In this document: positions 1 to 42,501 of the stretch, in pieces
How positions within the stretch are numbered: position 1 is the first letter of the stretch
Layout: every line of letters starts with the position of its first letter
Made by a program: the position numbers and the translations under genes
Notes under the pieces: generated by a model
What the model saw: only the letters and a program-made list of their open reading frames with translations
What the model was told of the DNA's origin: nothing
Databases searched by the model: none
IMG/VR virus record: IMGVR_UViG_3300044731_002337
Location: 1 to 64,000 of that record
Reading direction: 5' to 3' (one strand)
DNA length: 64,000 nt

Positions 1-113
1 AGTTACCTCTTCGAATGAACAATAAGAAGTTACCTCTTCGAATGAACAATAAGAAGTTACCTCTTCGAATGAACAATAAGAAGTTACCTCTTCGAATGAA
101 CAATAAGAAGTTA
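1..113 (+). repeat. Tandem array, 27-bp unit GAAGTTACCTCTTCGAATGAACAATAA, about 4 copies (truncated by window start); dispersed core family 1
   Basis: Exact 27-nt periodicity read directly (units start at 1, 28, 55, 82). Confidence 0.97.
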
Positions 114-6029: not shown

Positions 6030-6092
6030 GGTTTTTTTTTCTCATGGTGTAAAAGAATTTCCAGGGGTTAAAGGAAAGAGGTGTTTGTATAA

Positions 6093-6132
6093 TCATTCGA
6101 AGAGGCAACTTCTCGTTTAATCGAAAAGGTAA
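6093..6132 (-). repeat. Two degenerate 24-bp units of core family 1 in a divergent intergenic region
   Basis: + strand TCATTCGAAGAGGCAACTTCTCGT-TTAATCGAAAAGGTAA matches the 42.2-42.5 kb array units. Confidence 0.7.
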
Positions 6133-6176
6133 TTGTAAGAAAATAAAGTAAAAAAGAAAGAAAGAGAACAAGGTGG

Positions 6177-10033: not shown

Positions 10034-13000
10034 TTACTTTGCATGAATGATAAATTTGGTATGTAATTTCTGAATCATTTGTGAGCTTAGTCGTTTGAAT
10101 TGACTTTTAGAATGGGTGATGATGTAGTGGCCCATTTCGCGTCTTGTGTTTTCATCCACGTTGGGGAAATGATGAGAGACTAAATGAGAAATTTTCTGTA
10201 ATGAATCATCCAATAGTCCAGCTGCAAGTTTCATGGCGGTAGTTAAGCGTGTACAAGTAGAATGGGTAGAAAACATTTGTTCAACAGTTCGAATCATATG
10301 GTGAGTAATGAGTTGATCAGTATACTTTGACAGTAATTTCTCAACTTTTTTACGTCGTTTTCTACTGTGGTATAATTCTTCTTCATCAATGTAGTCGTAT
10401 ACATTAGTTTGCTCTAGATTATATTTGGTAATCAGAGTATCATGTATCATGCGTTGAATGATTGTAGTCAAGACATGAGTTGTTTCTTCAGGTAAGGAAT
10501 GCATTACATATTGACAAATTAGTTTTTGTAGTTTGGCATTTACGACAACTCGACCATTCTTACGGTGATATGTGATAGTTTTCTTTTTCTTCTTAGTTTT
10601 CGTCTTTAGTATCATTTCTTGTTCTACTTCAGTTTCAGTAGAGGTTTTGGAGGGTGAGGAAGGACTTGGTTGATAGGGTGGTGAAGGTATGTCATCTGAC
10701 TTGAGATCAGAATTATCAAGATTATCATCAAAGTGATCATCGAAATGTTCATGTGGGATGAATTTGGGGGAAGGTGTAGAGGCCATTTCGTCTGCATGCC
10801 GTGTAAGAATATCTGTGGTAGTATAGGATAGTTTGTTTCCATGAAATCGTTGAAATCGAAATAAAATGGTGTCATGTACTGGTCGTGCATCTAGCCATTT
10901 ATTTACCATTTTACAAAAATGTTTGGGAGAATCGATAAGAGTGATCACATGTTGAAGATCTTGTTTGGTGACTTTCTCTAGATTCAACATACAAGGTAAT
11001 AAATGATTCGATTCAGTAGCTGATGGATGAGGATATAAGAGATGACCTTCTGCATGAAATACTCGATGAAGGGTTGGATGGAGTTTACCCCATAAAGAGT
11101 ATAATTCATCATAATGTATAATAATCATCTTTTGTGGATGTGTAAGTAGAAACATATCAAACCATTTGGCAGGATTGTAACGTATAAATTGTTGGCAATA
11201 GTTGGATACGAATACATGTGGACCTAATGGTGTATCTATACCTGTTTGTTCATTGATTATACCATGGGAATTGATTTGAGTGTATGGATAATTGTTATCG
11301 ACAAACTGATCCGGATTATAAAGTATATCTACCTGTACTTCATTTTCCACTTCGATTTCTCGTTCTTGTTCTTGTTCCTGGTCGAGGATGGTCGAATGGG
11401 CGAGTGAGACTCGGTAACTACCTTGTTTAAGTTTGGTTGCGTAACGTATCAATTGTGTCTTTAAGTATTTTCGATTTGTTTCCATATCTTGCTGTTGTAA
11501 CTTATGCCATTGGTCGGGTAGTTGGTTGTTTGATTTGGGTTGTGTAGATGATAACTCATAAACAATGTGAAGAGAATGTTTATGTTCAGGTAAATGTATT
11601 CCTCGAATGCGATACATGGCTTGTACAACTTGATATTCTCGCATAGATTCATGGGCCATGAGTAATACGCGAAGGCTATGTGGATGTTTGATGTCTGTTC
11701 CTACAATGTGTGCATTATCGAAATAATAGAAATAGTGATGATCCTCATTGTTGAAGCTATTCGAGTTATTGGTGATAGAATAAAGGTGTTGATTTGGGTA
11801 TACCTTAGTCGTGTGTTTTGCATCAACATAGACAATGGGGCGCTTAGTGTGTTTATGTAATAAGTCAAGAACTTGAGAGGGTGTATATTGTTTACAGTAT
11901 CCACACGCATCAATAAATACGTCGTAATGGTGAATTGATGGCCAAATGTGTTGTATAGGTTTGATGTGTGGCGCTTGATCTTGTAGCAGTTTCACCACGT
12001 GACGGTATGAGCTATCACCTGTGACACATGTAATGTTAAGTTCATCACTGGAAGGAATTGCAATGGTTCCAGAAAATGCATATGTGATACATTGTTTTTG
12101 CTTAAGTATATCAACCATGGAGATCGTCTTGACAATATCAGTGTAGCATAGTTTGGGGAATAAACATTCAGATACATAGGCGCAAAGGAGATTTTTATGG
12201 GGTGCCACTAACTCTAGATCGCGACGTCGAGAGATGGTTCGTGTTAGCAGTTGTCGTTGGTCATGAGTGAGTGTCTTGGCGTGACGTAAAGCAATGCATG
12301 TTCCAATATATTTTACATCATTTGACGTGAATTCAGATGTGTCGTGGGGTACATCCATGGCGATATAAGGGACAATAAATAATGAATGATCGCGGAAGCC
12401 ATATTTAACGCGGTAAAGCCATTCATGTTCAATGGTGTGAATACAATGTCGCCAATGTTGAAATAAATACTCATAACCTTGATCACAGTATTGTAATTGA
12501 TCTTTATCCCAATGAGGGTAGTTTTCATGACAGATAATGATTTCGGGTAAGATGTGTTGGAACCAATGCATCATCTTTTCGGATAGCTTGAATGGGCCAT
12601 AACCTAGTCTTTCTTTCACTACTTGATTGTAATCAGATTTACAAGGCATACATACGCTATCATATTCATCGATGATCATCATGTCTGGTGTAAATGCGCC
12701 TGGTTTGTAGAGTAGATATAGTCGTTTGAGGTCAGCATCACTTACGACGTGAATAATGGAGAAACCAGGTCGCCGTGAAAGTTTGGCGGGGTGAAATCCG
12801 GTTCGAATAATAACCCATGGAATTAGTTGAAGGGCCATGACTTTTTGAAGTGCGTCCTTAACTAGGTGGCGTGGTTGGATCACGAGAATGTATATCCCAT
12901 GAGTGGTTAGTTGTGGGGAATGACGAATAGATTCTAGATAGTCTACAATTAAGTAAGGCATGATAATGGAGGATTTTCCCATGCCCATAAGGAGTTGAAT

Positions 13001-16000
13001 AGCACAATTATGTTTGGTCCCAGCATGTCTCTGTAATGCTTGTAGTATCTCGGTTTGATCAGGTCTGGGTTTCAATAGGTATACACGTTCCCAAAATGTA
13101 CGAATGGATTCATGGGGCGAAAAACGTCTCACGTAATGCTGGTCCCAATATGCAATCCAATCATCATAAATTAGACGTTGATCTATTGTATCTTTATTGA
13201 GATAATCCAACATAAATGACCCACTATATAGTAAAGGATTGATAGCGCTTACAACTTCATATACAAAGGGGCTATTTTCATTGAGGTTCATGGATAGAAC
13301 GGTGTATAGGGCAATCATATCTGTGACTGATATATTGATAAACCAGGAAAAGTCTGGTAAAAATTCAAGAATTGCAAAATGAGGGTCAATCACGATCTTG
13401 TCTCGAAGTGATGGGTCATGATGGCGATACATATCAAAACGTTTATGATGAAATAATCTGACTAATAATGCTCTTCTGTTTGGATTATCAGTGTGGAACA
13501 TGAGGCATACACTTGCAGTAGAATCATGACATGACCAGTGAAGTAGAGGATCTTTAATAACTTGATCATAATTCGTGTACCAACCATCATTTGGATTGTT
13601 GAGATGCCATCGATTCTGTATGCGGTACCAGGTATGGGAAGGAAGTTTCTGTTGTACGGAAATAAAACGAGCGGTAACTTGAGGTTCATTCGAAGAGGTA
13701 ACCTGTTGAGTAGATGTATCTTTAGTTTGAATCGAGTATCCATGTTCTCGCCATTGTGATGAATGCAAATCGAAGAATGTAATGAATTCACATACTGGTA
13801 ATGTCTTTTGATACATCCAATGTGATGTTATAGGATCCAAGGTGAGTTCAGGGTTTTCCATTGTAGTGATGGTTTGACCTGATGCTTTTATATGTAAATA
13901 GCGAAAGTGGCTGCTAGCATTACAATAGTTAATCAGTGGTTGGAATAATGTGGCGTCTTGACCTTGTAATGCGTAAATATAATAAATGAAGAGTTCTTTG
14001 TGAAAGGTTGGCGAGGTATTGAGAAATTGTTGGATGATCCAAGGTTCTGGATATTGTGGGTCTCGACATAATAGGAGGGCCAAATAATAATAGGCGAGAT
14101 TATCTTGTATATCAGGTCGAAATACGTGTTGAAGTTGTAATGTGACGCGGTAAGCTACACAGATGCCTAAATACAAGTGTAGATGTTCTGTAGGGATGGT
14201 GTGGTACTGGAGATGCCAAAAATGGTTACGTACCGTTTGGGCGTATTCGTCACGCTGTTGTAGGTTAAGTGTGGTGCAAGGTGAATGACGAAATGAAGTG
14301 ACAATGTCTCGAAATTGAATAGAGGCAAAAGAAAGATTACAGTTTAGGTTACCTTGAACGGGGATCATGATGGGTGATGTGGTAATGGTTTGGGATGGTT
14401 CCAATACAATAAAGTGTTGTATAAATTTGTCGAGCTCCTTCTTGTTTGTGGTGATGGGTTTATGTTTATGATTAATTTGGTTACGTAATTTAAAAGTAAT
14501 GAGTAAAGCGGTGAATGCATCAAGTTCAGAATGGAGTTGTAGTTTATGTTTCACGCTGAGTAGATCAGAAACCTTGGTTCGACTTTGAAAGAGTAGTTTG
14601 AGATATTGGTCTAAGGAGGCGCGTGATACCTTGGACACTACATAATTATACCATAGGAAGCCAAATGTATAATTAATCATACCGAAAATGTCAGTATTAA
14701 GATCTGGCTCGACAATGATTCTTCCTGTCAGGTAATAGGTGAGAAAACTGAACACATATGGAAATTGTTGTGCAGAAATGGTCTCTTTGGTTTGCCAGTA
14801 TAGACATGCTTCTTTACAATATTTAGCATCGATAATAAGTTTGAGATGATTATTGTATTGGTATGGCATTCGAGCGTGATTTAGCCATGGAAAGGTTTCA
14901 AATTCTTGGTTTGGAATCCAGTGAGTGTTGGTTGGAACAGTAAAGTATTCATATGCGGGATAAGAAGTATCTTTGGAATTGATATCATAATAATCAATGT
15001 GGAATGTACGAATTAATTTTTGATAAGTGTTTCGGTCGCATATTGCACCTTCTTTGCAGACGACATGTTGTAGAGCATGACCCATAGATAAGGTTTCGTT
15101 GGAGTCGATTTTGGTTGGTGCTTCGACATGTTTTTTCATGTAATTAAAAAAATCGGTAAAGTAGTGACAAACTTCTTGGAGGTGTTTTTGGTGTTGGGTG
15201 ATGAGCTGGTAGACGACATACCACAAGGTGCAATAAAAAGCGCATGTTCCTCCTAATTGGGGAGAGGCGTAAAGTCGACCTTCATGCCAGGTACATGCCA
15301 TTCTACCCATAGCATAGATGGTATAACGAGTTGGATGTTGTGGGATTTCAGGTGGAACGGTATGAAACTGTTGATACATTTCATCGGTATCATGGAATCG
15401 AATGGACTTGTCACCAGAAATGAGGAATTGTTTTAATTGGTCTTGAGATGGTTTGATGGGTTGTACAACATTGTACATGCCTTCAAGTTCATTATGGAAT
15501 TGTAATCCATCACCACTATTACATACAAACACTTGTTCACCAGGCCGAGTAAAGAGTATTGTTGCATGTCCAATCGTATTAAAAAGACGAACTGATGTAT
15601 ATGTTTCGTCTAATATATGGCAATAACTCTCGATAATTAGTTTATACATGTGCGGATCAGTACGATTAGCTAAAAAATGATAAGTCATCGCTCTGAGAAG
15701 ATCTTTGGTCATGATCTTGGTTTCACTGCCGTTACCATTTACCAATAAGTCTTGTAATGCAACTACATTCGCTAATTCTGATTGATTTAACAATAGACGG
15801 AATCGATTTAATGAGTCATACATTTCTTCGAGTGAAAGCAGCCATGGGAAATGTTCGGTAGGATGTACTTGGTATGCCCAAATATGTACCCCTAATTTGT
15901 TTACCTTTTTCATACTATGAAATTCTTTTATATCGTCATGAAGAATCAAGTTGGCGTAAGTAGTATCTACCATAACATTTACAAAGAATGGATTTTTCCA

Positions 16001-16027
16001 AAAGGTAATGGGGATATTATTTATCAT
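10034..16027 (-). CDS. ~2000-aa DUF3638/DUF3645-like protein: putative N-terminal Cys-peptidase plus SF2-like P-loop NTPase (paralogue 1)
   Basis: QLLMGMGKSSIIMP Walker A, IIDEYD Walker B, EQEQEREIEVENEV; N-terminal GHA..CNSG..QLGGTC. Confidence 0.75.
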   Translation of the reverse strand: MINNIPITFWKNPFFVNVMVDTTYANLILHDDIKEFHSMKKVNKLGVHIWAYQVHPTEHFPWLLSLEEMYDSLNRFRLLLNQSELANVVALQDLLVNGNGSETKIMTKDLLRAMTYHFLANRTDPHMYKLIIESYCHILDETYTSVRLFNTIGHATILFTRPGEQVFVCNSGDGLQFHNELEGMYNVVQPIKPSQDQLKQFLISGDKSIRFHDTDEMYQQFHTVPPEIPQHPTRYTIYAMGRMACTWHEGRLYASPQLGGTCAFYCTLWYVVYQLITQHQKHLQEVCHYFTDFFNYMKKHVEAPTKIDSNETLSMGHALQHVVCKEGAICDRNTYQKLIRTFHIDYYDINSKDTSYPAYEYFTVPTNTHWIPNQEFETFPWLNHARMPYQYNNHLKLIIDAKYCKEACLYWQTKETISAQQFPYVFSFLTYYLTGRIIVEPDLNTDIFGMINYTFGFLWYNYVVSKVSRASLDQYLKLLFQSRTKVSDLLSVKHKLQLHSELDAFTALLITFKLRNQINHKHKPITTNKKELDKFIQHFIVLEPSQTITTSPIMIPVQGNLNCNLSFASIQFRDIVTSFRHSPCTTLNLQQRDEYAQTVRNHFWHLQYHTIPTEHLHLYLGICVAYRVTLQLQHVFRPDIQDNLAYYYLALLLCRDPQYPEPWIIQQFLNTSPTFHKELFIYYIYALQGQDATLFQPLINYCNASSHFRYLHIKASGQTITTMENPELTLDPITSHWMYQKTLPVCEFITFFDLHSSQWREHGYSIQTKDTSTQQVTSSNEPQVTARFISVQQKLPSHTWYRIQNRWHLNNPNDGWYTNYDQVIKDPLLHWSCHDSTASVCLMFHTDNPNRRALLVRLFHHKRFDMYRHHDPSLRDKIVIDPHFAILEFLPDFSWFINISVTDMIALYTVLSMNLNENSPFVYEVVSAINPLLYSGSFMLDYLNKDTIDQRLIYDDWIAYWDQHYVRRFSPHESIRTFWERVYLLKPRPDQTEILQALQRHAGTKHNCAIQLLMGMGKSSIIMPYLIVDYLESIRHSPQLTTHGIYILVIQPRHLVKDALQKVMALQLIPWVIIRTGFHPAKLSRRPGFSIIHVVSDADLKRLYLLYKPGAFTPDMMIIDEYDSVCMPCKSDYNQVVKERLGYGPFKLSEKMMHWFQHILPEIIICHENYPHWDKDQLQYCDQGYEYLFQHWRHCIHTIEHEWLYRVKYGFRDHSLFIVPYIAMDVPHDTSEFTSNDVKYIGTCIALRHAKTLTHDQRQLLTRTISRRRDLELVAPHKNLLCAYVSECLFPKLCYTDIVKTISMVDILKQKQCITYAFSGTIAIPSSDELNITCVTGDSSYRHVVKLLQDQAPHIKPIQHIWPSIHHYDVFIDACGYCKQYTPSQVLDLLHKHTKRPIVYVDAKHTTKVYPNQHLYSITNNSNSFNNEDHHYFYYFDNAHIVGTDIKHPHSLRVLLMAHESMREYQVVQAMYRIRGIHLPEHKHSLHIVYELSSTQPKSNNQLPDQWHKLQQQDMETNRKYLKTQLIRYATKLKQGSYRVSLAHSTILDQEQEQEREIEVENEVQVDILYNPDQFVDNNYPYTQINSHGIINEQTGIDTPLGPHVFVSNYCQQFIRYNPAKWFDMFLLTHPQKMIIIHYDELYSLWGKLHPTLHRVFHAEGHLLYPHPSATESNHLLPCMLNLEKVTKQDLQHVITLIDSPKHFCKMVNKWLDARPVHDTILFRFQRFHGNKLSYTTTDILTRHADEMASTPSPKFIPHEHFDDHFDDNLDNSDLKSDDIPSPPYQPSPSSPSKTSTETEVEQEMILKTKTKKKKKTITYHRKNGRVVVNAKLQKLICQYVMHSLPEETTHVLTTIIQRMIHDTLITKYNLEQTNVYDYIDEEELYHSRKRRKKVEKLLSKYTDQLITHHMIRTVEQMFSTHSTCTRLTTAMKLAAGLLDDSLQKISHLVSHHFPNVDENTRREMGHYIITHSKSQFKRLSSQMIQKLHTKFIIHAK
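13673..13703 (-). repeat. Single in-frame unit of core family 1 inside the 1997-aa CDS
   Basis: GGTAAC-TTGAGGTTCATTCGAAGA-GGTAAC encodes VTSSNEPQVT; not present in the paralogue. Confidence 0.8.
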
Positions 16028-16045
16028 TTTTTTTTTGTTTTTATT

Positions 16046-19000
16046 TTACATAAGAAAACTTTTGATTAGTTTTTGTTTCATAGTAGAACTGAGTCGAGAA
16101 AATAGACAACCACTTTTAGCATGCGTAACTACAAATTTGGCCATATTACGTTTTATGTTATCCTCCACATTGGGGAAATGATGAGAGACTAAATAGAAAG
16201 ATTTTTGTAATGAATCGTCTAGTAGTCCAGCTGCAAGTTTCATGGTGGTTGTTAGACGAGTAAATGTAGAGTGAGAGGAGAACATGTGTTCAATGGTACG
16301 AATCATGTGATGGGTAATAGGTTGATCTGTATATTTCTCTACAAGTTTTTTAACCTTTCTTCTTCGTTTTCGACTTTGAACTAATTCTTCTTCGTCAATG
16401 TATCCATACACATTGGTTTGGTCAAGATTGTATTTGGTCAGTGTAAGATCATGACTCATGTTATGGATGAGTATAGTCGTGACTCGAATAGTTTCTTCAG
16501 GTAGACATTCCAAAACATATTTTCGGATACGTTTTTGCATGGATGGACTGACGACAAGTTGACCGTCAATGCGATGAACTTTGGGTATTCTGGATTTGGG
16601 AATAGTATAGTAATGAGTCAAGTCTGGTTCTGGTTCAGTTTTGGATGATGATGAGGAAGAATTTATAATGATTGGTGAGGCTTTACTTACAATGGGTGGT
16701 ATCATTGTCATGGCAACTTGCGGTAATGTAATTGGTGCTTCCGCTGGTGGTGGTGGTGGTGGTGAAGCAGGTTTGAGGATAGAGGATGATGGATAGATGT
16801 ATTTATGAGTATACTCTTTTGATGTTTGGGAAATGGTATAAAAAAGTCGTTTTCGATCGGCATTCGATGAAAAGAGTATGGTGTGGCTTAAAGGGCGAGA
16901 CATATGACATAGACTTTCCATGTTTTTGAATTCGGAAGGAACAGAAATTTGTTTGGCAATTTCAGTGAGGTGTGTAGAGGTTACACTGGATAAATAAAGC
17001 ATTGTGGCAATCATGGGGTGAAAGGCTTTAGTTGACGCGGTTGGATAGATAAGATGACCTGTAGCATGAAATACCTTGTGTTTGTTAGGTAATAGTTTGC
17101 CCCATAATGTATATAATTCATCATAATGGATAATAATTGATTTAGGATAATGCTCAAGGATAAATAGATCATACCATGTTATATAATTTTCACGAACAAA
17201 TTCTTTACAATATTTGGAAAGAAAAGTATGGGGACCAAATGAAATTTCGTTGGATGAAGCATTGTAGTTGATACGCCCTTGATTATCAATATGGGTATGA
17301 TTTTGGCGAATAACACGTTTGATAGTTAGTTTTACATGATAGGTATCTATTTCTACTTCATTTTCAACTTCTTTTTCATTTTCCTTTTCCTGTTCCAATT
17401 CAAGCATAGATGCTGGTTGATCATTACAATCCTCATGCATTATTTGATAAGACTTTTTAGCAATTTTCTTGTCATTCCTTAGTAGTAATATGTCTAAATA
17501 TTTGGCGTTAGTTTGTATATCTCTGTGTTGAGCATCTCTCCAAATGGTGACTAATGAGTTGTTGGGGGTTAACGATTCGTAAGCGAAAGTAATATCATGT
17601 TCGTTAGTGGGTACATCAATACCTCGAATGCGATACATGGCTTGTACGACTTGATATTCTCGTAATGATTCATGTGTCATGAGTAGAATGCGTAGTTTTC
17701 GAGGATGTTTTATGTCTGTACCTACAATGTGGGTATGATCAAAGAAGTAAAAATATGATTTGGACATATCAAACGTATTCGAGGTTCTGGTTTCAGAATA
17801 CACATGATTTTCTGGGTACACCATAGTAATGTGTTGTGAATTAACATAGACGATAGAGCATTTCACGTGTTCATGAAGCAATTCAATGATTTCCTGTTGT
17901 GAGTGATCTTTGCAATAGCCGCACGCATCAATAAAGACGTTGTAATGTTTGAGGTCAGCCCATAGATTCGTCTTGGGTGAAATGCATCTCATCTTGTGTC
18001 GGTTAGATTCGAGAATGTGTATTACTTTGGAGTAGGATTGATCCTTGGTGACGCAGGTGACATTTAATTGAGGGCTGGAAGGGATGGCTACAGTACCGGA
18101 GAAAGCATAGACGATACCGTGTTTTTGTCGTAATATATCTACCATGGTAATATTATTGACAATGGTACTGTAATGGAGTTGTGGGAATAAACATTCGGAT
18201 GCGTAGGTGCATAAGGGATTATTCTTGTCATCACTAGGTTGAATAATGCGTAATTTGAGGCGTCGATGAGTGGTTGCTTTGAGTAGTCGTTGTTGTTCTC
18301 GAGTGAGGTGACCTTCATGTCGTAGAGCCATACAGGTAGCAATGAAATTGACATCATTGGACGAAAATTCAGAGGATTCATGTGGTATGTCCATGGCAAT
18401 ATAAGGGACAACAAATAAGGAAGCTTTAGGTCCCGTATGTCGAAATCCATACTTGACTCGATAAATCCATTGATGATGAATCGTATGTACACATGTTTTC
18501 CAATGGGTAAATAATCGTTCTTGACCTGGATCACAATATTCGGATTGTTCTGTATCCAGTAAATCATATCGTTGGGTCATGATGATTTGGGGTAATCGAT
18601 GTTGAAACCAATGTAACATTTTGGGGGAAAGTGATGTATTACAACTATAGCCTCTTTGTTCTGCTACCACTTCATTATAGTCTGATTTACAAGGCATACA
18701 GATGCTATCATATTCATCGATGATCATCATATCAGGAATGAATTCATTGGGTTTTAATTTGAGATAGAGTCTCTTGAGATCGGTATCGCTTACTACGTGT
18801 ATGACAACATGGGATTTACGTCGAGTTAAGAGTTGGTCGGTGATGCCATAACGAACAATGACCCAAGGAATAAAGTTGAATGTAATAATTTTCTGTAGGG
18901 CGTCTTTGGTTAGGTGGCGAGGTTGAACGACTACAATGTATAGGCCTTGTTGATGCAGTTGTGGTAATGTGGTGGCATTTTGTAAATAGTTGACGAGTAG

Positions 19001-22000
19001 ATAGGGCATGATGATGGATGATTTTCCCATGCCCATGAGGAGTTGAATTACGCAATTGGGTCCTTTGGCTGCACCTTTCTCTAGTGCTTCTATTACATCC
19101 TTTTGGGCTGGTGTTGGAGTGAGGGGATATATACGCCCCCAAAAAGAGGAAACTGTATCTCGGGGTGTAAAAAGGCGTATATAATGTGTATCCCAATAGG
19201 TAATCCAGTCTTGTGGTAATATTCTCTTTGGGGAGTCCTTATTCAAGTAGTCGATCATGTAGGAGCCGCCATACATAAGTGGATCATAAGCAGAGGCAAC
19301 TTCATAAACTCGATTAGCATTAATGTTATGGTTTTCGGCGAGAATACGGTAAAGAACAACTATGTCCGTGATGGATAAGTCCTTAAACCATGTGTAATCT
19401 GAAGTAAATTCAATGATACCAAAATAAGGGTCAGTATGGATTTGGGATCGATAGGTTTCGTTTTGGTGTATATAGGAATCGTGACAATAGGAGTTGGTAT
19501 AATAGAGTAACAAGCCTCTTCTGGAAGGGTGGCTGGTATGATACATGAGACATATGGATGCGGCTTCAGCGTGACATGACCAGTGTAGTAAAGGATCAGA
19601 AATGACTTGAGAATAGTTGGTGAACCATCCTTCAGTGGGGTGATGTAAATGCCATTGTTGAGGTGTCACACTATACCAATTATGAGAAGGAATGCTTGGA
19701 GTAGTGGATCTATATCTCACAATACTGACATTATTTTTTTGGGTTCTTATCATGTATCCATACTTACAAAAGGGATCTTCTGGGAAACGAAAGAAGCTAT
19801 TTAATGGTTCGACTTTATCCCCATCATAGAACCATGTTCGAGTATTTTTGACTAATTGGAGAAGTGGTTCCTCAACCGTCGAGGTAGCGTCAGACGTCAT
19901 ATGTAGTTTTCGAAAAGCTGAGCTACATGAACACTGTTGCCATAATAATGTGATGGAGGATGATTTGCGAGTAGCATACAAATAGTATAAATAAATCTCT
20001 TGGGACTTGTTACGTGGGAGTGTTAAACGAATAAACTGGTCCATTATCCATTCTTCTGTATATTGTTTATCATCTCGACATAAAAGTAATGCTAGATAAT
20101 AATAGGGCAATGTAGAAAGAGGCAATTGCTTGTGTAGATTAGGGATGAGTACGTTGGATAATTGTAGTGTGACATTATAGGCTATACAGATACCCATATA
20201 AAGGTGGAGGTTGGATTCAGGGATATCATGAAATTTTAGATATTCAAAATGGTGACGAACACAGGACATTTCGATATCTTGTTGTTCTTTGGGTAGTAAC
20301 ACAACTTGACCGAATTCTATGCTTACCATTTTGGTGTTAAACTTCATGTCACCATATACGGGTATCAGTAAAGGAGAGAATTCAGTAACTTGTGTCGTCG
20401 GTGAAGCTTTATATTGGGACAGTAGTTTGCCAATGTCTTCATTTTTCACTAGAGGAGGAATAAACATATTGTTATAGCCTAATTGTTGATGTAACTTGCC
20501 AGCAATAACGAATGTGGCAAAAGTATCATGGTACAATTTTAGTTGTAACTTAACTGATGCATCGATAATATCTTCTTTGTTGACATCATTCCTCAAAATA
20601 TCACTTATGATATTGGTAACGAGAACAGTCCCCACTTTTGAGGTAATGTAATTATGCCACAGGCTACCGAAAGTGAGGTGTAACATTCTGAATAAGTCCG
20701 CCTGATGTGAACTAAGGGCCATAGCCATACTCGTGCAAAAATAACGTAAAAAACGCAACACTAAAGGAAATTGGGTGTCTGTAATCATCGATTTAGATTG
20801 CCAATGATGACATGCTTGTTTCACATATAATCCATTCATCAGTAATCGTAAGTCAGCTCCCATTCGTAATCTGGAATCTTCATGGTGAAACAGCCATGCA
20901 AATGTTTCGAATTCATTTGTTTGATCCCAGATTTGATCAAGACCTAACTTGGGATCTTCCCTAATTAAGTAATCTGTCTTGGTCAAGTTATGTCCATATA
21001 TCCTTCTATGATAATCGAGAACTAGCTTGTCATAGGTTTTATCACATTGTCGATTCTCTTTGCATAGTACATGTTGTAATGTGTACCCTTTGGAAGCAAT
21101 TGGGGTAGAAACAACTTGAATGGGTGATGCAACATGTTGTCTCATGTATTTTAAAAATTCCTCTATATACAACCCAATTTTTACTGCGCCGTGTTGACTG
21201 GTAGTAAGTAAACGGTATACGAGCAACCACACATTACAATAAAACGTACATGTGCCACCCAACTGTGGACTAGCATAAAGACATTGAGCGTCTTGATGAT
21301 AAGAGAAAATCATACGCGACATGCTGTACACGGTATATTTCTTAGTGGTAGCTGGTGGTGGTGGGGATACTAAATTAAGTTGTTCATAAATATCATCTAC
21401 TCTAGAAAAACTTATGGTTTTGGTGTTTTTACGTACAAGTGACATGAATTCATGATCTGGAATAATTTCTTGAATGACATTGTACATAGACTCGAAAGTA
21501 GCATGATTTTGTAGTCCACTTCCACTATTACTAATAAACCATTTCCTATTTTTCTCATCATGGAATAACAGCATAGCATGACCAGATGAATTCAATTCTC
21601 GTACTTTCATTTCATTAGGGTCCAATACTTCCAATAAGAATAACATAATATGAAAATACATTTGATGATCTGTATCTGCTTCATTTCCTCCCATCATCCC
21701 AAAGTCATGTAAATGGCGCATTGTCATGGCGTGAATCAATTCTTTGGCCATGCGTGCAGTTGTACTTCCGACATTAGGTTTGATTAATTCCTCCATAGCA
21801 ACAATATGGGCTAATTCGGAATCATTAAGTCGCAATTTATAGTTATCAATTCTTTTGATAATCTCTTTTTCAGAAATTTGCCAGGGAAGTCGTTTCTTAG
21901 GGTAATGTAGATGAGCCCATACAAATAATAGTAATGGAGTTTGTTCATTTGTTTTATAAACTTCTAGACTTGAAAGATCATGGCGTAATACATTCATTGC

Positions 22001-22060
22001 TATAGTTTCCATGAATATTTCCAAAAACTGTAAATTTCTCCATAATGCTTTTGGGATCAT
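16046..22060 (-). CDS. ~2000-aa DUF3638/DUF3645-like protein (tandem paralogue 2)
   Basis: Colinear with 10034..16027 along its whole length: GHA..SNSG..QLGGTC, QLLMGMGKSSIIMP, IIDEYD, shared C-terminal domain. Confidence 0.75.
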   Translation of the reverse strand: MIPKALWRNLQFLEIFMETIAMNVLRHDLSSLEVYKTNEQTPLLLFVWAHLHYPKKRLPWQISEKEIIKRIDNYKLRLNDSELAHIVAMEELIKPNVGSTTARMAKELIHAMTMRHLHDFGMMGGNEADTDHQMYFHIMLFLLEVLDPNEMKVRELNSSGHAMLLFHDEKNRKWFISNSGSGLQNHATFESMYNVIQEIIPDHEFMSLVRKNTKTISFSRVDDIYEQLNLVSPPPPATTKKYTVYSMSRMIFSYHQDAQCLYASPQLGGTCTFYCNVWLLVYRLLTTSQHGAVKIGLYIEEFLKYMRQHVASPIQVVSTPIASKGYTLQHVLCKENRQCDKTYDKLVLDYHRRIYGHNLTKTDYLIREDPKLGLDQIWDQTNEFETFAWLFHHEDSRLRMGADLRLLMNGLYVKQACHHWQSKSMITDTQFPLVLRFLRYFCTSMAMALSSHQADLFRMLHLTFGSLWHNYITSKVGTVLVTNIISDILRNDVNKEDIIDASVKLQLKLYHDTFATFVIAGKLHQQLGYNNMFIPPLVKNEDIGKLLSQYKASPTTQVTEFSPLLIPVYGDMKFNTKMVSIEFGQVVLLPKEQQDIEMSCVRHHFEYLKFHDIPESNLHLYMGICIAYNVTLQLSNVLIPNLHKQLPLSTLPYYYLALLLCRDDKQYTEEWIMDQFIRLTLPRNKSQEIYLYYLYATRKSSSITLLWQQCSCSSAFRKLHMTSDATSTVEEPLLQLVKNTRTWFYDGDKVEPLNSFFRFPEDPFCKYGYMIRTQKNNVSIVRYRSTTPSIPSHNWYSVTPQQWHLHHPTEGWFTNYSQVISDPLLHWSCHAEAASICLMYHTSHPSRRGLLLYYTNSYCHDSYIHQNETYRSQIHTDPYFGIIEFTSDYTWFKDLSITDIVVLYRILAENHNINANRVYEVASAYDPLMYGGSYMIDYLNKDSPKRILPQDWITYWDTHYIRLFTPRDTVSSFWGRIYPLTPTPAQKDVIEALEKGAAKGPNCVIQLLMGMGKSSIIMPYLLVNYLQNATTLPQLHQQGLYIVVVQPRHLTKDALQKIITFNFIPWVIVRYGITDQLLTRRKSHVVIHVVSDTDLKRLYLKLKPNEFIPDMMIIDEYDSICMPCKSDYNEVVAEQRGYSCNTSLSPKMLHWFQHRLPQIIMTQRYDLLDTEQSEYCDPGQERLFTHWKTCVHTIHHQWIYRVKYGFRHTGPKASLFVVPYIAMDIPHESSEFSSNDVNFIATCMALRHEGHLTREQQRLLKATTHRRLKLRIIQPSDDKNNPLCTYASECLFPQLHYSTIVNNITMVDILRQKHGIVYAFSGTVAIPSSPQLNVTCVTKDQSYSKVIHILESNRHKMRCISPKTNLWADLKHYNVFIDACGYCKDHSQQEIIELLHEHVKCSIVYVNSQHITMVYPENHVYSETRTSNTFDMSKSYFYFFDHTHIVGTDIKHPRKLRILLMTHESLREYQVVQAMYRIRGIDVPTNEHDITFAYESLTPNNSLVTIWRDAQHRDIQTNAKYLDILLLRNDKKIAKKSYQIMHEDCNDQPASMLELEQEKENEKEVENEVEIDTYHVKLTIKRVIRQNHTHIDNQGRINYNASSNEISFGPHTFLSKYCKEFVRENYITWYDLFILEHYPKSIIIHYDELYTLWGKLLPNKHKVFHATGHLIYPTASTKAFHPMIATMLYLSSVTSTHLTEIAKQISVPSEFKNMESLCHMSRPLSHTILFSSNADRKRLFYTISQTSKEYTHKYIYPSSSILKPASPPPPPPAEAPITLPQVAMTMIPPIVSKASPIIINSSSSSSKTEPEPDLTHYYTIPKSRIPKVHRIDGQLVVSPSMQKRIRKYVLECLPEETIRVTTILIHNMSHDLTLTKYNLDQTNVYGYIDEEELVQSRKRRRKVKKLVEKYTDQPITHHMIRTIEHMFSSHSTFTRLTTTMKLAAGLLDDSLQKSFYLVSHHFPNVEDNIKRNMAKFVVTHAKSGCLFSRLSSTMKQKLIKSFLM

Positions 22061-26597: not shown

Positions 26598-27995
26598 ATG
26601 GAGGAGGAAATGTTATCTTATTTTGGAAACTTGTCGCCACTACATATTCAATGTGAAGACGAATCAGTTACACTTTCGGAGTTGATACAGAGTAATGAGG
26701 AAGCATTGTTGAGGGATTTTTTGAAGAATTATCAAACAAAGGATTTCAGTGCATGTAGAGCTGAGTTGGAGCATCTGGATAAGTTTTTGGACATTCCATT
26801 GGTAGAAGCTTATTTTCAACCGAGTCATGTATCTTTGCAGCGTATGGCGACCCATCACTATGGTCACAAAGTCATGCCAACTTGCGGTAACAAAGTCATT
26901 ATCCCGGAAGATTGTTTTACGGAGGACATATTGACAAATGCGATTAAGATGGGGTATGTGGAGTCGGTACAGGCTGTACATGACTATGGTTACGTCTTTG
27001 ATAATGGATTATTTCTGGAATTGGCATTGGAAAAACCTCACGAGTCAGTGGCGACATTTATGATGGGGTGTGATGGAGTTGTAATTTCGGAAAGGGCGGT
27101 AACTTTAGTCATCGAGCATGGTCTAATGCAATGTGTAACTCAATTCCCATTCGACTTTGTGTTTACAAGTGATCATTTTCGCAGTGCTGTGAAGAGTAAT
27201 CAATTGGGCATGATTGATTTCTTTCATCAACGGAACATACCGATAGGAATTCATTTGTATATGTGGATTTGCCCCGATTTACGAACAGTCATTCATATGC
27301 TAGGGTTGGGATATGAAATCAGTATTGGAGATATTGCTCGAAGTGTTCATTTCAAGAAAATAGAATTGTTACGATACATGCATGAAAAGAAGGTGTTCAA
27401 TGTGTTGGTGCATGAGATTTATCAAGCAGCAGTTCACTCTGGAGAGATAGACATTGTGAAATATTTGGTGGACATTGGTGGAACATTTCAGCCGGAGCAT
27501 ATGCGTGATGCGTTAAACTCAAACAATATTGCCATTGTGGAGTTTCTATTGGACCAACATGTGTCAATACCGCAATTAAATGGAATATTTCGGATGAAGC
27601 ATCTAATGCTAAGGTTACTACACTCAAGGGGCTATGTGTTTTCCGAACAAATGTATCAGTTTACTATGCGAGAAGGGACTGTTGAAGCAGTTCAAGTCAT
27701 GGTGGAAAATGGTTATCAGCTGACATCGAAAGTATGGGCTCTTGTGATCTATGGTAATTCGAGGGATATACTTAGGATTCTTCAATTTTTGGTGGATCAA
27801 AAATGTCCTTGGGATCCTGATGTATGTCTATATGCTATTAACAAGCGAGCATTGGATATTTTTCAATTTGTAATTGAACATGGTTGCCCTTATAGCATGG
27901 CAACATGTAAAATCTTAGCCCACGATCATCCCGAAATAATGGTCTACTTATCATCCCTCCAATCACAAAAGTTACGACTTCGCAAACGAAAATAA
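26598..27995 (+). CDS. Ankyrin-repeat protein with shared N-terminal YLDIP domain
   Basis: FGNLSPL..LEHLDKFLDIPLV; KCPWDP, EHGCPY; C-terminal LRLRKRK. Confidence 0.85.
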   Translation: MEEEMLSYFGNLSPLHIQCEDESVTLSELIQSNEEALLRDFLKNYQTKDFSACRAELEHLDKFLDIPLVEAYFQPSHVSLQRMATHHYGHKVMPTCGNKVIIPEDCFTEDILTNAIKMGYVESVQAVHDYGYVFDNGLFLELALEKPHESVATFMMGCDGVVISERAVTLVIEHGLMQCVTQFPFDFVFTSDHFRSAVKSNQLGMIDFFHQRNIPIGIHLYMWICPDLRTVIHMLGLGYEISIGDIARSVHFKKIELLRYMHEKKVFNVLVHEIYQAAVHSGEIDIVKYLVDIGGTFQPEHMRDALNSNNIAIVEFLLDQHVSIPQLNGIFRMKHLMLRLLHSRGYVFSEQMYQFTMREGTVEAVQVMVENGYQLTSKVWALVIYGNSRDILRILQFLVDQKCPWDPDVCLYAINKRALDIFQFVIEHGCPYSMATCKILAHDHPEIMVYLSSLQSQKLRLRKRK

Positions 27996-31341: not shown

Positions 31342-32820
31342 TCAATGGGAGGTTGGATCGGGGATATTAGGACAAAATGGAATTCGGGAGGCATGATAAA
31401 ACATATGACATGTTCCATCACATTGGAAACCATTCTCATGAATATATTGGAGCATGGCAAAATGATTGCGTTGTGCAGCAAGTTGTTTCTTGGGCCATGA
31501 ACAACCTAAACTTTGTAAATAACGTACGACTTTCATTTGATTATTGTTAATGGCTTGTTCTAGTAGACTATAATGGGGCGATTGTAATCCTAAGCGAGTA
31601 CAAATATCAGTGTGTCCACGAGCTAATAAGCCGGAATACGATATGTAATTGATGGGTGCTTTCCGTCCATTATCAATGTGTGTCATGGTATCATCTGAAG
31701 TAACAAAAGGATGAGATTCCAAGTAGGTGATTAAATGTTCACAATGAGGTAATGAGGAAATGCCCATCAAGTCATTCCAACGCCATGATTTTAGGTTACC
31801 GCAGGTTTGCATGACAGTGTTACCGCAGGTTTGCATGACAGTGTTACCGCAGGTTTGCATGACGTTGTTACCGCAGGTTTGCATGACATTGTTACCATGT
31901 GAAAGTAAATGCTTAATCATTTCGTGTCGCGGCTCATCATGGGAAAATAATCGTTTGACAAATTCTTCATTAATCATTCTGGGTGTCCATAAATGAATAA
32001 ATAAATCAATGACGTTATATTGTATAGCATTGTGAATGTAAATGTGGGTATACTCTTGGAAACGGTTCGGCTGTGTGGGATACATTTCTTCGTAGTGGTC
32101 TCTGAAAAATTGGTAAACACCAAGTGAGGTAATGTGTTGTGCAATAGTTTTGAATTCTTGTTCTATAGTATCATTGTACCCATTCAAAGTGCCAAGGTTA
32201 CTCTTCATGAACTTGAGCATTTCCAGACTATTATGTTTAGCCGCTTCCACATAGCAGTTAAATGTGAATGGTTGACTTTCAGGTTGAAAAGGGAGTAGCT
32301 TGCAAAGAATAGTCATGTCATTGGCACGGACACAATATTTCATATCAATGTGTAATTGACCATGATGATCGATGACGAATTGAATCATGTCTATATTTCG
32401 ATGATGAATGGCATATTGTACTACCGAATTATCCCAGAAACATCCTTTTTCATATGCTTTTTGGAGAGTATCTACATGATTCCTGGCGGCGGCTTCACGA
32501 CAAAAATCAACCTGTTCCAAGTTGTATGGTGGGAAAATGGTGCATTGATTGTGAACAAGACGGTGAAACGCGGCGTAAGAGGTGGGGTTGAGGTATGATT
32601 CTACAAAGGGGATATCCAAGTATTTATCTAATGCTTCTAATGCTTTTCGTTCATGATGTACATTGCGACCACTAAACAGATCGAGTAATAGTTCTTTATG
32701 AGTAGGATTAAACGAAATCAAGTCATCTAGAGTAGTGGTGGTATCTATACATTGTACTCCTAGAGGTGTGTGATTACCAAATTCGAGTGTAACATGATGA
32801 ATACAAATAGTAAAGACCAT
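31342..32820 (-). CDS. Ankyrin-repeat protein with shared N-terminal YLDIP domain and internal GNxVMQTC repeats
   Basis: FGNHTPL..LEALDKYLDIPFV; EKGCFWD, LGCSWP. Confidence 0.82.
   Translation of the reverse strand: MVFTICIHHVTLEFGNHTPLGVQCIDTTTTLDDLISFNPTHKELLLDLFSGRNVHHERKALEALDKYLDIPFVESYLNPTSYAAFHRLVHNQCTIFPPYNLEQVDFCREAAARNHVDTLQKAYEKGCFWDNSVVQYAIHHRNIDMIQFVIDHHGQLHIDMKYCVRANDMTILCKLLPFQPESQPFTFNCYVEAAKHNSLEMLKFMKSNLGTLNGYNDTIEQEFKTIAQHITSLGVYQFFRDHYEEMYPTQPNRFQEYTHIYIHNAIQYNVIDLFIHLWTPRMINEEFVKRLFSHDEPRHEMIKHLLSHGNNVMQTCGNNVMQTCGNTVMQTCGNTVMQTCGNLKSWRWNDLMGISSLPHCEHLITYLESHPFVTSDDTMTHIDNGRKAPINYISYSGLLARGHTDICTRLGLQSPHYSLLEQAINNNQMKVVRYLQSLGCSWPKKQLAAQRNHFAMLQYIHENGFQCDGTCHMFYHASRIPFCPNIPDPTSH
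31795..31896 (-). repeat. Tandem 24-bp unit GGTAACAMYGTCATGCAAACCTGC x4 (family 2), in frame
   Basis: 24-nt periodicity; encodes GN(N/T)VMQTC. Confidence 0.95.
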
Positions 32821-40768: not shown

Positions 40769-41584
40769 GTGGAAAAAATCAAAATGTGGTTAACACTTGC
40801 TCATGTCTACGGTATTTTACTTATGCCAAATCAATGGATTAGTTTTGTAGTGGTACTACTGAATGCATGGATGATTAGGACCCCCTATTTGTGTTTTGTA
40901 AATTGTGTGTTGAATATGGTTGGTAACATGTCATGGTGCGGTGTAGTATTTTCAATGCTATGGTTATTGGATTCTCAAAATTTGGTCATTGGTGAGTTAC
41001 CTGGGAAATTTAGAAAAGAGGTCGAATACATTGTAAGTGTAAGTAAAGATTTGAAACCAGATAATTCAGAGATTTTTTGGACGAGTGTATTTGCAGATAA
41101 TGGTCAGACAACCAATATTCCTTACTCTCAAGGGCTATATGATTACATATCTGGTTTACGGTGGCAAATCATGGAGTTTTGGTGTAAGCGAATTAATGGG
41201 TTTGGTACGCTCATCAATCCATCCAATTCAGTAGAACAAGATTGGCATATTGATTATACATGGTCATACACAAGTCTATTTATACCCATTGAAAATTGTA
41301 CATCATCCAACATGACTCAGATTATGACAAGTTCAATTGTATGGGGATATTTCCATAATTCACGTAATATCAAAGAAAAAGAACAAGAGAATGTTATGGC
41401 CACCATCATTGTACCAAGGAAATGGTCATTGTTGTTATTGCCACCAAGTACATTTCACCGTGGCGTAAAGAACAACTCTGATATGGATCGAACATTGTTT
41501 TGGATATCCTATCAGAGTCGAACCGATCCAATCGAACATGAACATGCAGTGCAAGACTTTACCAAGAAATCAATAGACTTGTGA
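40769..41584 (+). CDS. Membrane-anchored 2OG-Fe(II) dioxygenase-like (PhyH-like) protein
   Basis: QDWHID (HxD), FHRGVKNNSDMDRT (distal His and Arg); hydrophobic N-terminus. Confidence 0.6.
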   Translation: MEKIKMWLTLAHVYGILLMPNQWISFVVVLLNAWMIRTPYLCFVNCVLNMVGNMSWCGVVFSMLWLLDSQNLVIGELPGKFRKEVEYIVSVSKDLKPDNSEIFWTSVFADNGQTTNIPYSQGLYDYISGLRWQIMEFWCKRINGFGTLINPSNSVEQDWHIDYTWSYTSLFIPIENCTSSNMTQIMTSSIVWGYFHNSRNIKEKEQENVMATIIVPRKWSLLLLPPSTFHRGVKNNSDMDRTLFWISYQSRTDPIEHEHAVQDFTKKSIDL

Positions 41585-41675
41585 CGCTAGTTCATTCAAA
41601 GAGGTAACGCTAGTTCATTCAAAGAGGTAACGCTAGTTCATTCAAAGAGGTAACGCTAGTTCATTCAAAGAGGTA
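41584..41675 (-). repeat. Tandem array, 23-bp unit (+ strand ACGCTAGTTCATTCAAAGAGGTA) x4, core family 1
   Basis: Exact 23-nt periodicity, intergenic between convergent genes. Confidence 0.97.
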
Positions 41676-41700
41676 GTAAAAAGGTCATGATGAAAATATT

Positions 41701-42501
41701 TTATTTTTCAATAGGAAAAAAAATAGGCATTACAATTTTTGCTTTCACTGAAGGACAAGAACGAGGTTGCGGGGTTGGTTTTCTTTGTTTCTTGAGTGGG
41801 GCTAGTGAAAAATCAGAAGAGGAGTTGTCTTGCCTTGATCTTTTTCTTGGTAAGGCATAGAATAGAGCAGTTTCACCATTCTTGTTTCGAAGGTTCACAT
41901 CGGCCCCATAGTTAACCAGAAACTTGATTCCAATTCCCGAGTTTTTCTCAGAAGCACACATGAGAAGAGAACAGCCATCATTCTTGTCCGAGACTGAATT
42001 GATATCGCACTTGGCCGTCTTGATCAACCAATCAAACATGTCCACATCCATTGAGTGAAAATTATGATTCATCACTTTGAAAAAAACAGCAAACAAGATG
42101 AAATAACCCAATTCGTTTTCTTGGGTCAGCACCTCAGGCTTCTTCACAATCAACTCCTTCAACTCATAGTATTGCCCTTGTGCAAGCAACTCAAATGGAT
42201 CGGTAACCTCAGTTTCATTCAAAGAGGTAACTTTTGATTCATTCGAAGAGGTAACTTCTGGTTCAATCGAAGAGGTAACTTCTGGTTCAATCGAAGAGGT
42301 AACTTTTGGTTCAATCGAAGAGGTAACTTCTGGTTTAATCGAAGAGGTAACTTTTGGTTCAATCGAAGAGGTAACTTTTGGTTCAATCGAAGAGGTAACT
42401 TTTGGTTCAATCGAAGAGGTAACTTCTGGTTCATTCGAAGAGGTAACTTTTGGTTCAATCGAAGAGGTAACTTCTGGTTCATTCGAAGAGGTGGTAGACA
42501 T
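41701..42501 (-). CDS. Ankyrin-repeat protein with N-terminal (VTSSI/NEP[E/K])x12 repeat tract
   Basis: GCSLLMCAS..LVNYGADVNLRNKNGETALFYA. Confidence 0.8.
   Translation of the reverse strand: MSTTSSNEPEVTSSIEPKVTSSNEPEVTSSIEPKVTSSIEPKVTSSIEPKVTSSIKPEVTSSIEPKVTSSIEPEVTSSIEPEVTSSNESKVTSLNETEVTDPFELLAQGQYYELKELIVKKPEVLTQENELGYFILFAVFFKVMNHNFHSMDVDMFDWLIKTAKCDINSVSDKNDGCSLLMCASEKNSGIGIKFLVNYGADVNLRNKNGETALFYALPRKRSRQDNSSSDFSLAPLKKQRKPTPQPRSCPSVKAKIVMPIFFPIEK
42202..42493 (-). repeat. Tandem array, 24-bp unit x12, core family 1, in frame
   Basis: 24-nt periodicity with variant units. Confidence 0.97.

What the first reader, a model, noticed from the sequence alone, without database searches (positions are those of the whole stretch)
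13673..13703. Single repeat unit inserted in frame in one giant paralogue, bounded by GGTAAC
Paralogue 1 reads QTKDTSTQQVTSSNEPQVTARF where paralogue 2 reads RTQKNNVSIVRYR. The DNA is GGTAAC + 18 nt + GGTAAC, like one 24-bp unit with a target-site-like duplication. This is the clearest sign that the element enters coding sequence as one unit, comparable in effect to Rickettsia palindromic elements.
Basis: partly seen in the sequence, partly recalled or inferred. Interest (0 to 1): 0.62.

Follow-up and report, generated by a model that had tools for sequence, protein, structure and literature searches.

The report
Repeat unit copied into giant gene
A 30-base piece of a short repeat that is scattered through this lake giant-virus genome sits in frame inside one of two huge sister genes and adds ten amino acids; it is one of about twenty places where such 24-base modules lie in or between genes, a miniature parallel to the repeat elements found inside Rickettsia genes.

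Summary
Window 13673-13702 reads GGTAAC + 5 nt + an exact copy of the 19-nt core (which ends in GGTAAC) of the genome's 24-nt repeat. It lies in frame in the 1997-aa paralogue (10034-16027, minus strand) as VTSSNEPQVT. The 2004-aa paralogue and the nearest outside homologue lack it. Removing exactly these 30 nt makes the two paralogues align without a gap.

The "target-site duplication" reading is not supported. GGTAAC is the repeat's own constant end, shared by three module families. Nearly every array and lone unit starts and ends on it, so the site is 1.25 units of the repeat.

The wider claim holds in effect. The same DNA modules sit in about 14 ORFs: kinase, PARG-domain, ankyrin and both giant genes. 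They are read only in stop-free frames, with period 24 in genes and 23, 25 or 27 in most arrays between genes. Natural strains differ by whole units (4 vs 2; 2 vs 1), whereas this unit is identical in five lake metagenomes.

There is no hairpin, no inverted ends and no transposase. The best reading is anchor-guided copying (template switch or ectopic recombination) into a variable, indel-prone segment. This gives an effect like Rickettsia palindromic elements without membership of that family.

The parts
13673..13702 (+). The finding: 1.25 units of the A module. It consists of the anchor GGTAAC (13673-13678), the spacer TTGAG (13679-13683) and the 19-nt core ending in GGTAAC (13684-13702). On the minus strand it is codons 776-785, VTSSNEPQVT.
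10034..16027 (-). Giant paralogue 1 (P0001, 1997 aa). It carries the unit and has sub-threshold DUF3638/DUF3645 P-loop signatures.
16046..22060 (-). Giant paralogue 2 (P0002, 2004 aa), 46% identical to paralogue 1. It lacks the 10 residues.
16704..16727 (+). Decayed single B-module unit inside paralogue 2 (18/22 to the B consensus; 0.015 such hits expected per genome). It is read as LPQVAMT and lies inside a 17-aa stretch that paralogue 1 lacks.
1..113 (-). A-module array, 4 units, period 27, outside any ORF of 60 aa or more, at the very start of the contig.
6091..6133 (+). Two degenerate A units between divergent genes.
41584..41677 (+). A-module array, 4 units, period 23, between two convergent genes.
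42202..42495 (+). A-module array, 12 units, period 24. It encodes the (E/K)VTSS(N/I)EP N-terminus of the ankyrin-repeat ORF 41701-42501 (minus strand), in the same frame as in paralogue 1.
44528..44702 (+). A-module array, 7 exact cores, period 24, inside a doubtful 110-aa ORF.
31795..31896 (-). B-module array, 4 units, period 24, read as VMQTCGN inside the ankyrin-family ORF 31342-32820.
26868..26891 (+). Single B unit (3 mismatches), read as VMPTCGN, inside the ankyrin-family ORF 26598-27995.
63190..63283 (+). Three degenerate A units near the C-terminus of a PARG-domain ORF (63086-64435, which runs past the window end).

Best explanation
The 30 nt are a secondary, DNA-level copy of the genome's own 24-nt A-module minisatellite. 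Paralogue 1 acquired it after the two giant genes duplicated.

The modules (families A, B and C) share the hexamer GGTAAC. Copies start and end on this anchor. The most likely route is therefore homology-guided copying with no dedicated enzyme. In one version a nascent strand ending in (G)GTAAC switches to one of the many arrays, copies a whole unit and returns. In another, ectopic recombination takes place at the anchor. Ordinary slippage then adds or removes whole units.

The copy persists for three reasons. Its length is a multiple of three. This frame of the module has no stop codon and gives a hydrophilic Ser/Thr-rich peptide. It also lies in the least conserved, indel-prone stretch of the protein, about 200 residues before the P-loop domain.

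What is shown: the identity of the DNA, its absence from the sister gene and the nearest homologue, the anchor-to-anchor boundaries, whole-unit copy-number changes between strains, and fixation of this unit. What is inferred: the template-switch or recombination mechanism, the surface-loop location, and that the peptide is functionally neutral.
For: 1. The core matches 19/19 and homology stops exactly at the two anchors.
2. Both aligners place a 10-aa gap in paralogue 2. The spacing between the conserved GY and PxH anchors is 31 aa in paralogue 1, 21 aa in paralogue 2 and 17 aa in the nearest homologue, L010/P0029. The tree groups P1 with P2 apart from the others.
3. The paralogues are 46% identical, while the unit shows zero divergence in anchor plus core. 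The copy is therefore far younger than the duplication.
4. Three module families share the GGTAAC anchor and there is an A/B hybrid unit. Most first units are preceded by GGTAAC or a 5/6 match to it.
5. The same DNA is read as VTSSNE, SFEEVT or LPLRMN (A) and as VMQTCGN, SCKPAVT, VTAGLHD or LPQVCMT (B) in unrelated ORFs. These include a kinase, a PARG-domain protein and ankyrin proteins. Conservation is therefore at the DNA level, not the peptide level.
6. All arrays in coding sequence have periods that are multiples of 3. Three of the five non-coding arrays have periods of 23, 25 and 23.
7. Whole-unit changes occur between natural strains. One gene has 4 versus 2 A units with 0 substitutions in about 850 nt. 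The kinase has 2 versus 1 B unit in a 98% identical strain.
8. Paralogue 2 has its own decayed B unit inside a P2-only 17-aa stretch.
9. There is no hairpin. No TnpB, Y1 transposase, GIY-YIG or HNH_3 domain was found in the record.
10. The site lies at a conservation minimum: 20% identity in the 40-column window, against 62-70% just downstream. The homologue in L010 carries its own in-frame repeat about 35 residues upstream.
Against: No empty site from a close relative is available, so polarity rests on one paralogue and one 28-39% identical homologue. Two distant homologues have 30-31-aa loops.

The data cannot tell whether the left GGTAAC was already in the gene (a 24-nt insertion) or came with the copy (30 nt). 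No array with the spacer TTGAG exists in the record, so no donor is identified.

There are two changes in the 5-nt spacer and none in the other 25 nt. This hints at DNA-level constraint or a lost donor, which the model does not explain. The structure model is uninformative at the site, with pLDDT 24-30. The record is estimated at only 55% complete, so an encoded mobilising enzyme could lie in the missing part.
Confidence: 0.55

Rival explanations
1. A true miniature mobile element. An unknown virus- or host-encoded nuclease or recombinase recognises (G)GTAAC and pastes 24-nt modules next to it. The upstream hexamer would then be the target and the reader's comparison with selfish elements would hold mechanistically.
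For: An anchor lies at both ends of nearly all loci. The upstream anchor sometimes differs at its first base (TGTAAC, CGTAAC), as a pre-existing target might. The modules are dispersed on both strands over about 21 loci. Three unrelated module bodies share the anchor. The core is better conserved than the spacer, even in the lone unit.
Against: A length of 24-30 nt is far below any known transposable unit. There are no inverted ends and no hairpin. No TnpB, Y1 transposase, GIY-YIG or HNH_3 domain was found in 295 kb. Array edges are degenerate on both sides, as in ordinary minisatellites. No presence/absence polymorphism of any lone unit was seen among strains.
Confidence: 0.15
2. The lone unit is the remnant of a longer in-gene array that contracted by slippage to the minimum of 1.25 units. 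On this reading it did not enter as one unit.
For: Whole-unit losses or gains are seen in nature, including a 2 versus 1 unit difference in the kinase gene and 4 versus 2 in ORF 72820-73545. Slippage cannot take an array below one unit plus the flanking anchor, which is exactly what is seen.
Against: There is no significant trace of further decayed units beside it. The best flank match is 8/12, about what many offsets would give by chance (own count). The unit is invariant in five runs. This rival changes only the history, not the origin of the DNA.
Confidence: 0.2
3. The long loop is ancestral and paralogue 2 and the L010 homologue each lost it. The resemblance to the repeat would then be peptide-level convergence or chance.
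For: The distant homologues P0006 and P0007 have 30-31 residues between the same anchors, as paralogue 1 does.
Against: The match is 19/19 at the nucleotide level including synonymous positions, with 0.01 expected. The same DNA is read in other frames elsewhere. The distant loops share no sequence with it, and alignment at 21% identity is unreliable. This reading needs two deletions plus a conversion.
Confidence: 0.03
4. An assembly or chimera artefact created by the repeat.
For: The contig begins inside an array, so repeats do break this assembly.
Against: Sequence is identical in an independent Logan contig and in contigs from four other runs of four other studies that span the site. The reading frame is intact over 1997 codons.
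Confidence: 0.01

Closest known systems
Rickettsia palindromic elements (RPE; Ogata et al. 2000, recalled from my own knowledge; mentioned in PMC1166351)
   Same: Both are dispersed repeated DNA found between genes and in frame inside unrelated genes. Both add a peptide segment that homologues lack. The same DNA is read in different frames, and copies are tolerated in variable parts of proteins.
   Different: RPEs are about 100-150 bp, palindromic and not tandemly arrayed. Here the unit is 24 nt (30 with both anchors), has no hairpin, forms arrays that change by whole units, and occurs in a large DNA virus.
Intragenic minisatellites (variable tandem repeats in coding sequence, as reviewed in PMC3899988; the African swine fever virus B602L central variable region and white spot syndrome virus ORF94 repeats are recalled from my own knowledge)
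   Same: The unit length is a multiple of three, copy number changes in frame by slippage between strains, and the peptides are hydrophilic and low in complexity.
   Different: A usual minisatellite is local to one gene. Here the same modules, with a shared hexamer anchor, occur at about 21 loci, in about 14 ORFs, on both strands and in several frames. At the site of the finding there is only one unit.
Templated insertions and microhomology-mediated template switching in replication or break repair (established mechanism, from my own knowledge)
   Same: A short insert is identical to sequence elsewhere in the genome and bounded by a short direct repeat that could have primed the switch and the return.
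   Different: Such events normally use arbitrary microhomologies and leave unique inserts. Here the same anchor and the same modules recur, which suggests that the abundance of arrays and the anchor bias the process. The mechanism is not demonstrated here.
Miniature transposable elements with target-site duplications (for example the Pandoravirus MITEs, PMC4495683) and bacterial REP elements mobilised by RAYT transposases (from my own knowledge)
   Same: Short, non-coding-capable repeats spread through a genome, including a giant-virus genome.
   Different: Those elements have terminal inverted repeats or hairpins, a target duplication whose sequence differs from site to site, and a cognate transposase. 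None of these was found here.

Membership tests
Rickettsia palindromic element-like selfish DNA in genes | The same repeated DNA occurs in intergenic regions and in frame inside unrelated ORFs. | tested here: met
   About 21 loci, with about 14 ORFs including a kinase, a PARG-domain protein, ankyrin proteins and both giant genes.
Rickettsia palindromic element-like selfish DNA in genes | The copy is absent from homologues, i.e. it is an insertion. | tested here: inconclusive
   It is absent from paralogue 2 and from the L010 homologue. Two distant homologues have equally long, unrelated loops. No close orthologue was found.
Rickettsia palindromic element-like selfish DNA in genes | Palindromic, hairpin-forming sequence of about 100-150 bp. 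| tested here: not met
   The unit is 24-30 nt. Its fold energy is -0.2 to -0.3 kcal/mol, no better than shuffles (z +0.6 to +0.7).
Transposon or MITE with target-site duplication | Flanking direct repeat made from the target, so different at each site. | tested here: not met
   The flanking hexamer is the same at all loci and is the internal unit boundary of every array. All 30 nt are extra relative to paralogue 2.
Transposon or MITE with target-site duplication | Terminal inverted repeats or a subterminal hairpin. | tested here: not met
   the only palindrome is the 6-nt TTCGAA.
Transposon or MITE with target-site duplication | A cognate transposase or nuclease in the genome. | tested here: inconclusive
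   There is no hit to PF07282, PF01797, PF01541 or PF13392. The record is estimated at 55% complete and only four families were tried.
Coding minisatellite (variable tandem repeat) | Head-to-tail copies at the locus. | tested here: not met
   The finding's site has only 1.25 units. Sister loci have 3-12 units.
Coding minisatellite (variable tandem repeat) | Whole-unit copy-number variation between strains. | tested here: met
   Sister loci show 4 versus 2 units and 2 versus 1 unit. There is no variation at the finding's own site in contigs from five runs.
Templated insertion by template switching | The insert is identical to a template elsewhere, with microhomology at the junctions. | tested here: met
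   The core matches 19/19 at 17 other places in the genome, and GGTAAC is present at both junctions. This is compatible with the model but does not discriminate it from the rivals.
Templated insertion by template switching | The empty site retains one copy of the microhomology. | not testable with these tools
   No close orthologue of paralogue 1 exists in any collection searched.
DUF3638/DUF3645 P-loop proteins (the host gene) | A Pfam match above the gathering score. | tested here: inconclusive
   PF12340 scores 24.7 bits against a cut-off of 31, and PF12359 scores 14.5-20.9 against 25. The profile search also reaches long proteins of 2200-2900 aa through this region.

The most novel reading that the evidence does not exclude
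The GGTAAC-anchored 24-nt modules are the smallest self-propagating elements yet seen inside genes. On this reading they form a family of 'nano-elements' in a giant virus, spread by an unrecognised anchor-specific activity (an enzyme, or a replication quirk linked to the genome's extreme strand asymmetry). They would seed new peptide segments in proteins, with the conserved core also serving as a DNA-level signal.
Probability: 0.15. Interest if true: 0.8.

Novelty: new variant of a known kind. Interest (0 to 1): 0.5.

Why it matters
This case shows short repeat DNA adding residues to otherwise conserved viral proteins. The donor family, the recipient gene, an unfilled sister gene and natural whole-unit variants are all visible in one genome.

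If the anchor-guided spread is confirmed, it would be a simple, enzyme-free route by which giant viruses generate variable loops and linkers. The proteins affected here include a kinase, a PARG-domain protein, ankyrin proteins and giant NTPases. It would also extend the 'selfish DNA inside genes' idea from Rickettsia to viruses and to a much smaller unit size.

There is a practical consequence as well. These modules break assemblies and create copy-number alleles that strain-level studies of lake giant viruses should expect.

Tried and rejected
- Close relatives to obtain an empty site were not found. The word-index protein search returned only paralogue 2. The IMG/VR scan and the JGI metagenome scan returned nothing.
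It gave only two distant full-length homologues and two fragments. One fragment led to the useful L010 homologue, which is split by a run of N.
- The core 19-mer is absent from other IMG/VR contigs. It hits one JGI contig (L013) without anchor, array or similar composition, which I took as chance.
- The AlphaFold2 model of residues 590-960 used a 5-sequence alignment. Mean pLDDT was 52, and 24-30 at the site, so there is no verdict on 'surface loop'.
- A diverged contig laid on the stretch in run X2 turned out to be paralogue 2 of the same virus, not a relative.
- A possible decayed second unit next to the insert matches 8/12, which is not significant once offsets are counted. The resemblance of the downstream codons to the start of module B (14/21) conflicts with their conservation in paralogue 2 and L010. 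I rejected both.
- A mini-intron reading was rejected. The GT...AG span on the gene strand is 25 nt, so its removal would break the frame.
- Orientation bias of the core (about 10 loci on the + strand against 5 on the - strand) is not significant.
- Two literature searches found no description of such modules in giant viruses.

Full report
**What the window is.** The window is the first 64 kb of a 294,773-bp IMG/VR virus record that CheckV estimates at 55% complete. The record encodes a family-B DNA polymerase. Its relatives' contigs carry HSP70, an RNA ligase and similar genes. I take it to be a large DNA virus of the giant-virus kind from lake water, although no NCLDV capsid match was found in this partial record.

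**The observation.** The + strand at 13673-13702 reads GGTAAC, then five bases (TTGAG), then a 19-nt core that itself ends in GGTAAC.
- The core matches the consensus of the genome's tandem arrays exactly. It has 30 matches with up to 3 mismatches in the window, against 0.01 expected. It has 50 matches with up to 4 mismatches in the whole record, against 0.9 expected from Markov simulations.
- On the minus strand the 30 nt are codons 776-785 (VTSSNEPQVT) of an intact 1997-codon ORF, paralogue 1.
- Paralogue 2 lies directly upstream on the same strand. It has 2004 codons and is 46% identical overall.
- BLASTP and MAFFT both put one 10-residue gap in paralogue 2 opposite the unit.
- After removing exactly the 30 nt, the 21 residues between the conserved GY and PSH anchors align without any gap.
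- This is the largest indel in the first 1750 aligned positions. It sits in the least conserved 40-column window of that part (20% identity), just before a 62-70% identical block.

**It is not an artefact.** A Logan contig from a public run is 100% identical over 17.4 kb. Contigs from four further lake-water runs from four other studies span the site with no difference or indel there. One of them comes from a slightly diverged strain.

**What the repeat is.** The core belongs to module A, whose 24-nt unit is a 5-nt spacer, a 13-nt body and GGTAAC.
- A second module, B, has a different 18-nt body plus GGTAAC (window 31795-31896 and elsewhere).
- A third module, C, has period 23 and lies at genome 288818-288915. 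It ends in the same hexamer. One unit at genome position 175360 is an A/B hybrid.
- Arrays with period 24 lie in ORFs.
- Arrays outside ORFs have period 27 (1-113), 23 (41584-41677), 25 (genome 161884-161952) and 23 (family C).
- Lone or paired units also occur.
- Most loci begin just after a GGTAAC or a 5/6 match to it, and end on one. All three true lone A units (13684, genome 160701 and 293612) have the exact hexamer five bases upstream.
- The pattern 'GGTAAC + 18 nt + GGTAAC' is therefore the repeat's own phase, 1.25 units. It is not a duplication of a target that differs from site to site.

**The modules are DNA entities, not peptide motifs.**
- Module A is read as VTSSNE in paralogue 1, in the ankyrin ORF 41701-42501 and in genome ORF 265554-267113.
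- Module A is read as SFEEVT in genome ORFs 174764-175783 and 160508-161830, and as LPLRMN in genome ORF 72820-73545.
- Module B is read as VMQTCGN in ORFs 31342-32820, 26598-27995 and genome 223265-224134. It is read as SCKPAVT in genome ORF 219553-219984, as VTAGVHD in a protein kinase at genome 230216-231397, and as LPQVAMT in paralogue 2.
- Reading the units by eye, each module has stop codons in two of its six frames. Only stop-free frames are used.
- Pfam confirms that the host genes are unrelated: Pkinase 5e-29, microbial PARG 1e-18, and ankyrin repeats.
- Paralogue 2 carries its own decayed B unit (4 mismatches in 22; 0.015 such hits expected per genome). That unit lies inside a 17-residue stretch absent from paralogue 1.

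**Outside homologues.**
- The word-index search found only paralogue 2.
- The full profile search found two full-length homologues, P0006 and P0007, at about 21% identity in this region, plus two fragments.
- One fragment (P0005) lies on a 63.7-kb ENA contig. Its upstream 3.5 kb is the missing N-terminal part of the same gene, separated by a run of N.
- The number of residues between the two anchors is 31 in paralogue 1, 21 in paralogue 2, 17 in the ENA homologue, and 30-31 in the two distant ones.
- The tree groups the two paralogues together, then the ENA homologue, then the distant pair.
- The nearest two comparators thus support a gain in paralogue 1. The distant pair shows that loop length alone is not decisive. 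None of them has the core peptide.
- The ENA homologue has its own in-frame repeats, including five copies of a short His/Lys/Asp-rich motif (HKDH-type) about 35 residues upstream of the site. This region therefore tolerates insertions in the family.

**Dynamics.** Cluster look-ups found natural variants.
- The product of genome ORF 72820-73545 has four A units here and two in an ENA assembly that is otherwise identical over about 850 nt.
- The kinase has two B units here and one in a 98% identical strain.
- Whole units are therefore gained or lost faster than point substitutions accumulate, including the step between one and two units.
- No lone unit showed presence/absence variation.

**Mechanism.** The unit has no hairpin and no inverted ends. 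No TnpB, Y1 transposase, GIY-YIG or HNH_3 domain is present in the record.

I therefore favour anchor-guided copying without a dedicated enzyme. This could be a template switch from a strand ending in (G)GTAAC to one of the many arrays and back, or ectopic recombination at the anchor, followed by slippage. This would explain several features:
- the anchor-to-anchor boundaries;
- the whole-unit inserts;
- the A/B hybrids and mixed arrays;
- why only bodies that carry the anchor have spread.

It does not explain why the spacer of the lone unit differs at two of five positions while the other 25 nt are unchanged. It also identifies no donor. The AlphaFold2 model was too poor at the site (pLDDT 24-30) to say whether it is a surface loop. 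The loop location is inferred from low conservation, indel-proneness and hydrophilicity.

**Comparison and verdict.** In effect the site resembles a Rickettsia palindromic element inside a gene. It fails that family's defining features of length and palindromy, and it fails the target-duplication and inverted-repeat features of miniature transposons. Among known kinds it is closest to a coding minisatellite. Its modules, however, are dispersed genome-wide through a shared anchor.

I rate it a new variant of a known kind, of moderate interest.

Noticed in passing
whole record; window 1-52000 in particular: There is a very strong GC skew of about +0.2 on the + strand over about 280 kb, whichever strand the genes are on. 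It flips to -0.07 and then -0.25 in the last 15 kb. Proteins encoded on the minus strand, including both giant genes, are strikingly rich in His, Gln, Pro and Thr. This suggests an unusual, perhaps unidirectional or strand-displacing, replication mode.
   Followed up: partly
window 1-113: The contig starts inside a 27-nt-period A-module array (4.2 exact copies). This is either an assembly break at the repeat or a repeat-bearing genome end. A 299,086-bp version of the contig exists in another source.
   Followed up: no
L010:6511-12526: The homologous giant gene of a related virus (ENA ERZ3460577) is split by a run of N placed inside an 18-nt tandem repeat. It also carries its own in-frame repeats: a His/Lys/Asp-rich motif repeated five times and a Leu/Ser-rich array. 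Neighbouring 27-nt arrays at L010:4462-4580 likewise share a common anchor with different bodies.
   Followed up: partly
window 10034-22060, minus strand, residues about 250-270 of both giant proteins: Both paralogues and the L010 homologue conserve a motif of the type 'PQ(L/I)G.TC..Y', which looks like a papain-like cysteine-peptidase active site, upstream of the P-loop region. This was not tested against any family.
   Followed up: no
window 45632-48802, minus strand: This 1056-aa ORF contains a long internal duplication. Two copies of a segment of about 300 residues each begin with the same Ser/Thr/Pro-rich stretch.
   Followed up: no
genome 175347-175554 (L016) and 266472-266549 (L015): Mixed arrays interleave A and B modules, and one 21-nt hybrid unit joins the start of B to the end of A. 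This is direct evidence that the module families recombine.
   Followed up: partly
window 55989-56057 and 61981-62041: Two further exact or near-exact tandem repeats, of period 33 and period 25, are unrelated to the GGTAAC modules.
   Followed up: no
genome 160508-161830 (L017): The ORF with a lone A unit has a sub-threshold match to a homing-endonuclease-associated repeat (PF18780, 24.5 bits against a cut-off of 26). A 25-nt-period A array lies 54 nt upstream of its start codon.
   Followed up: no
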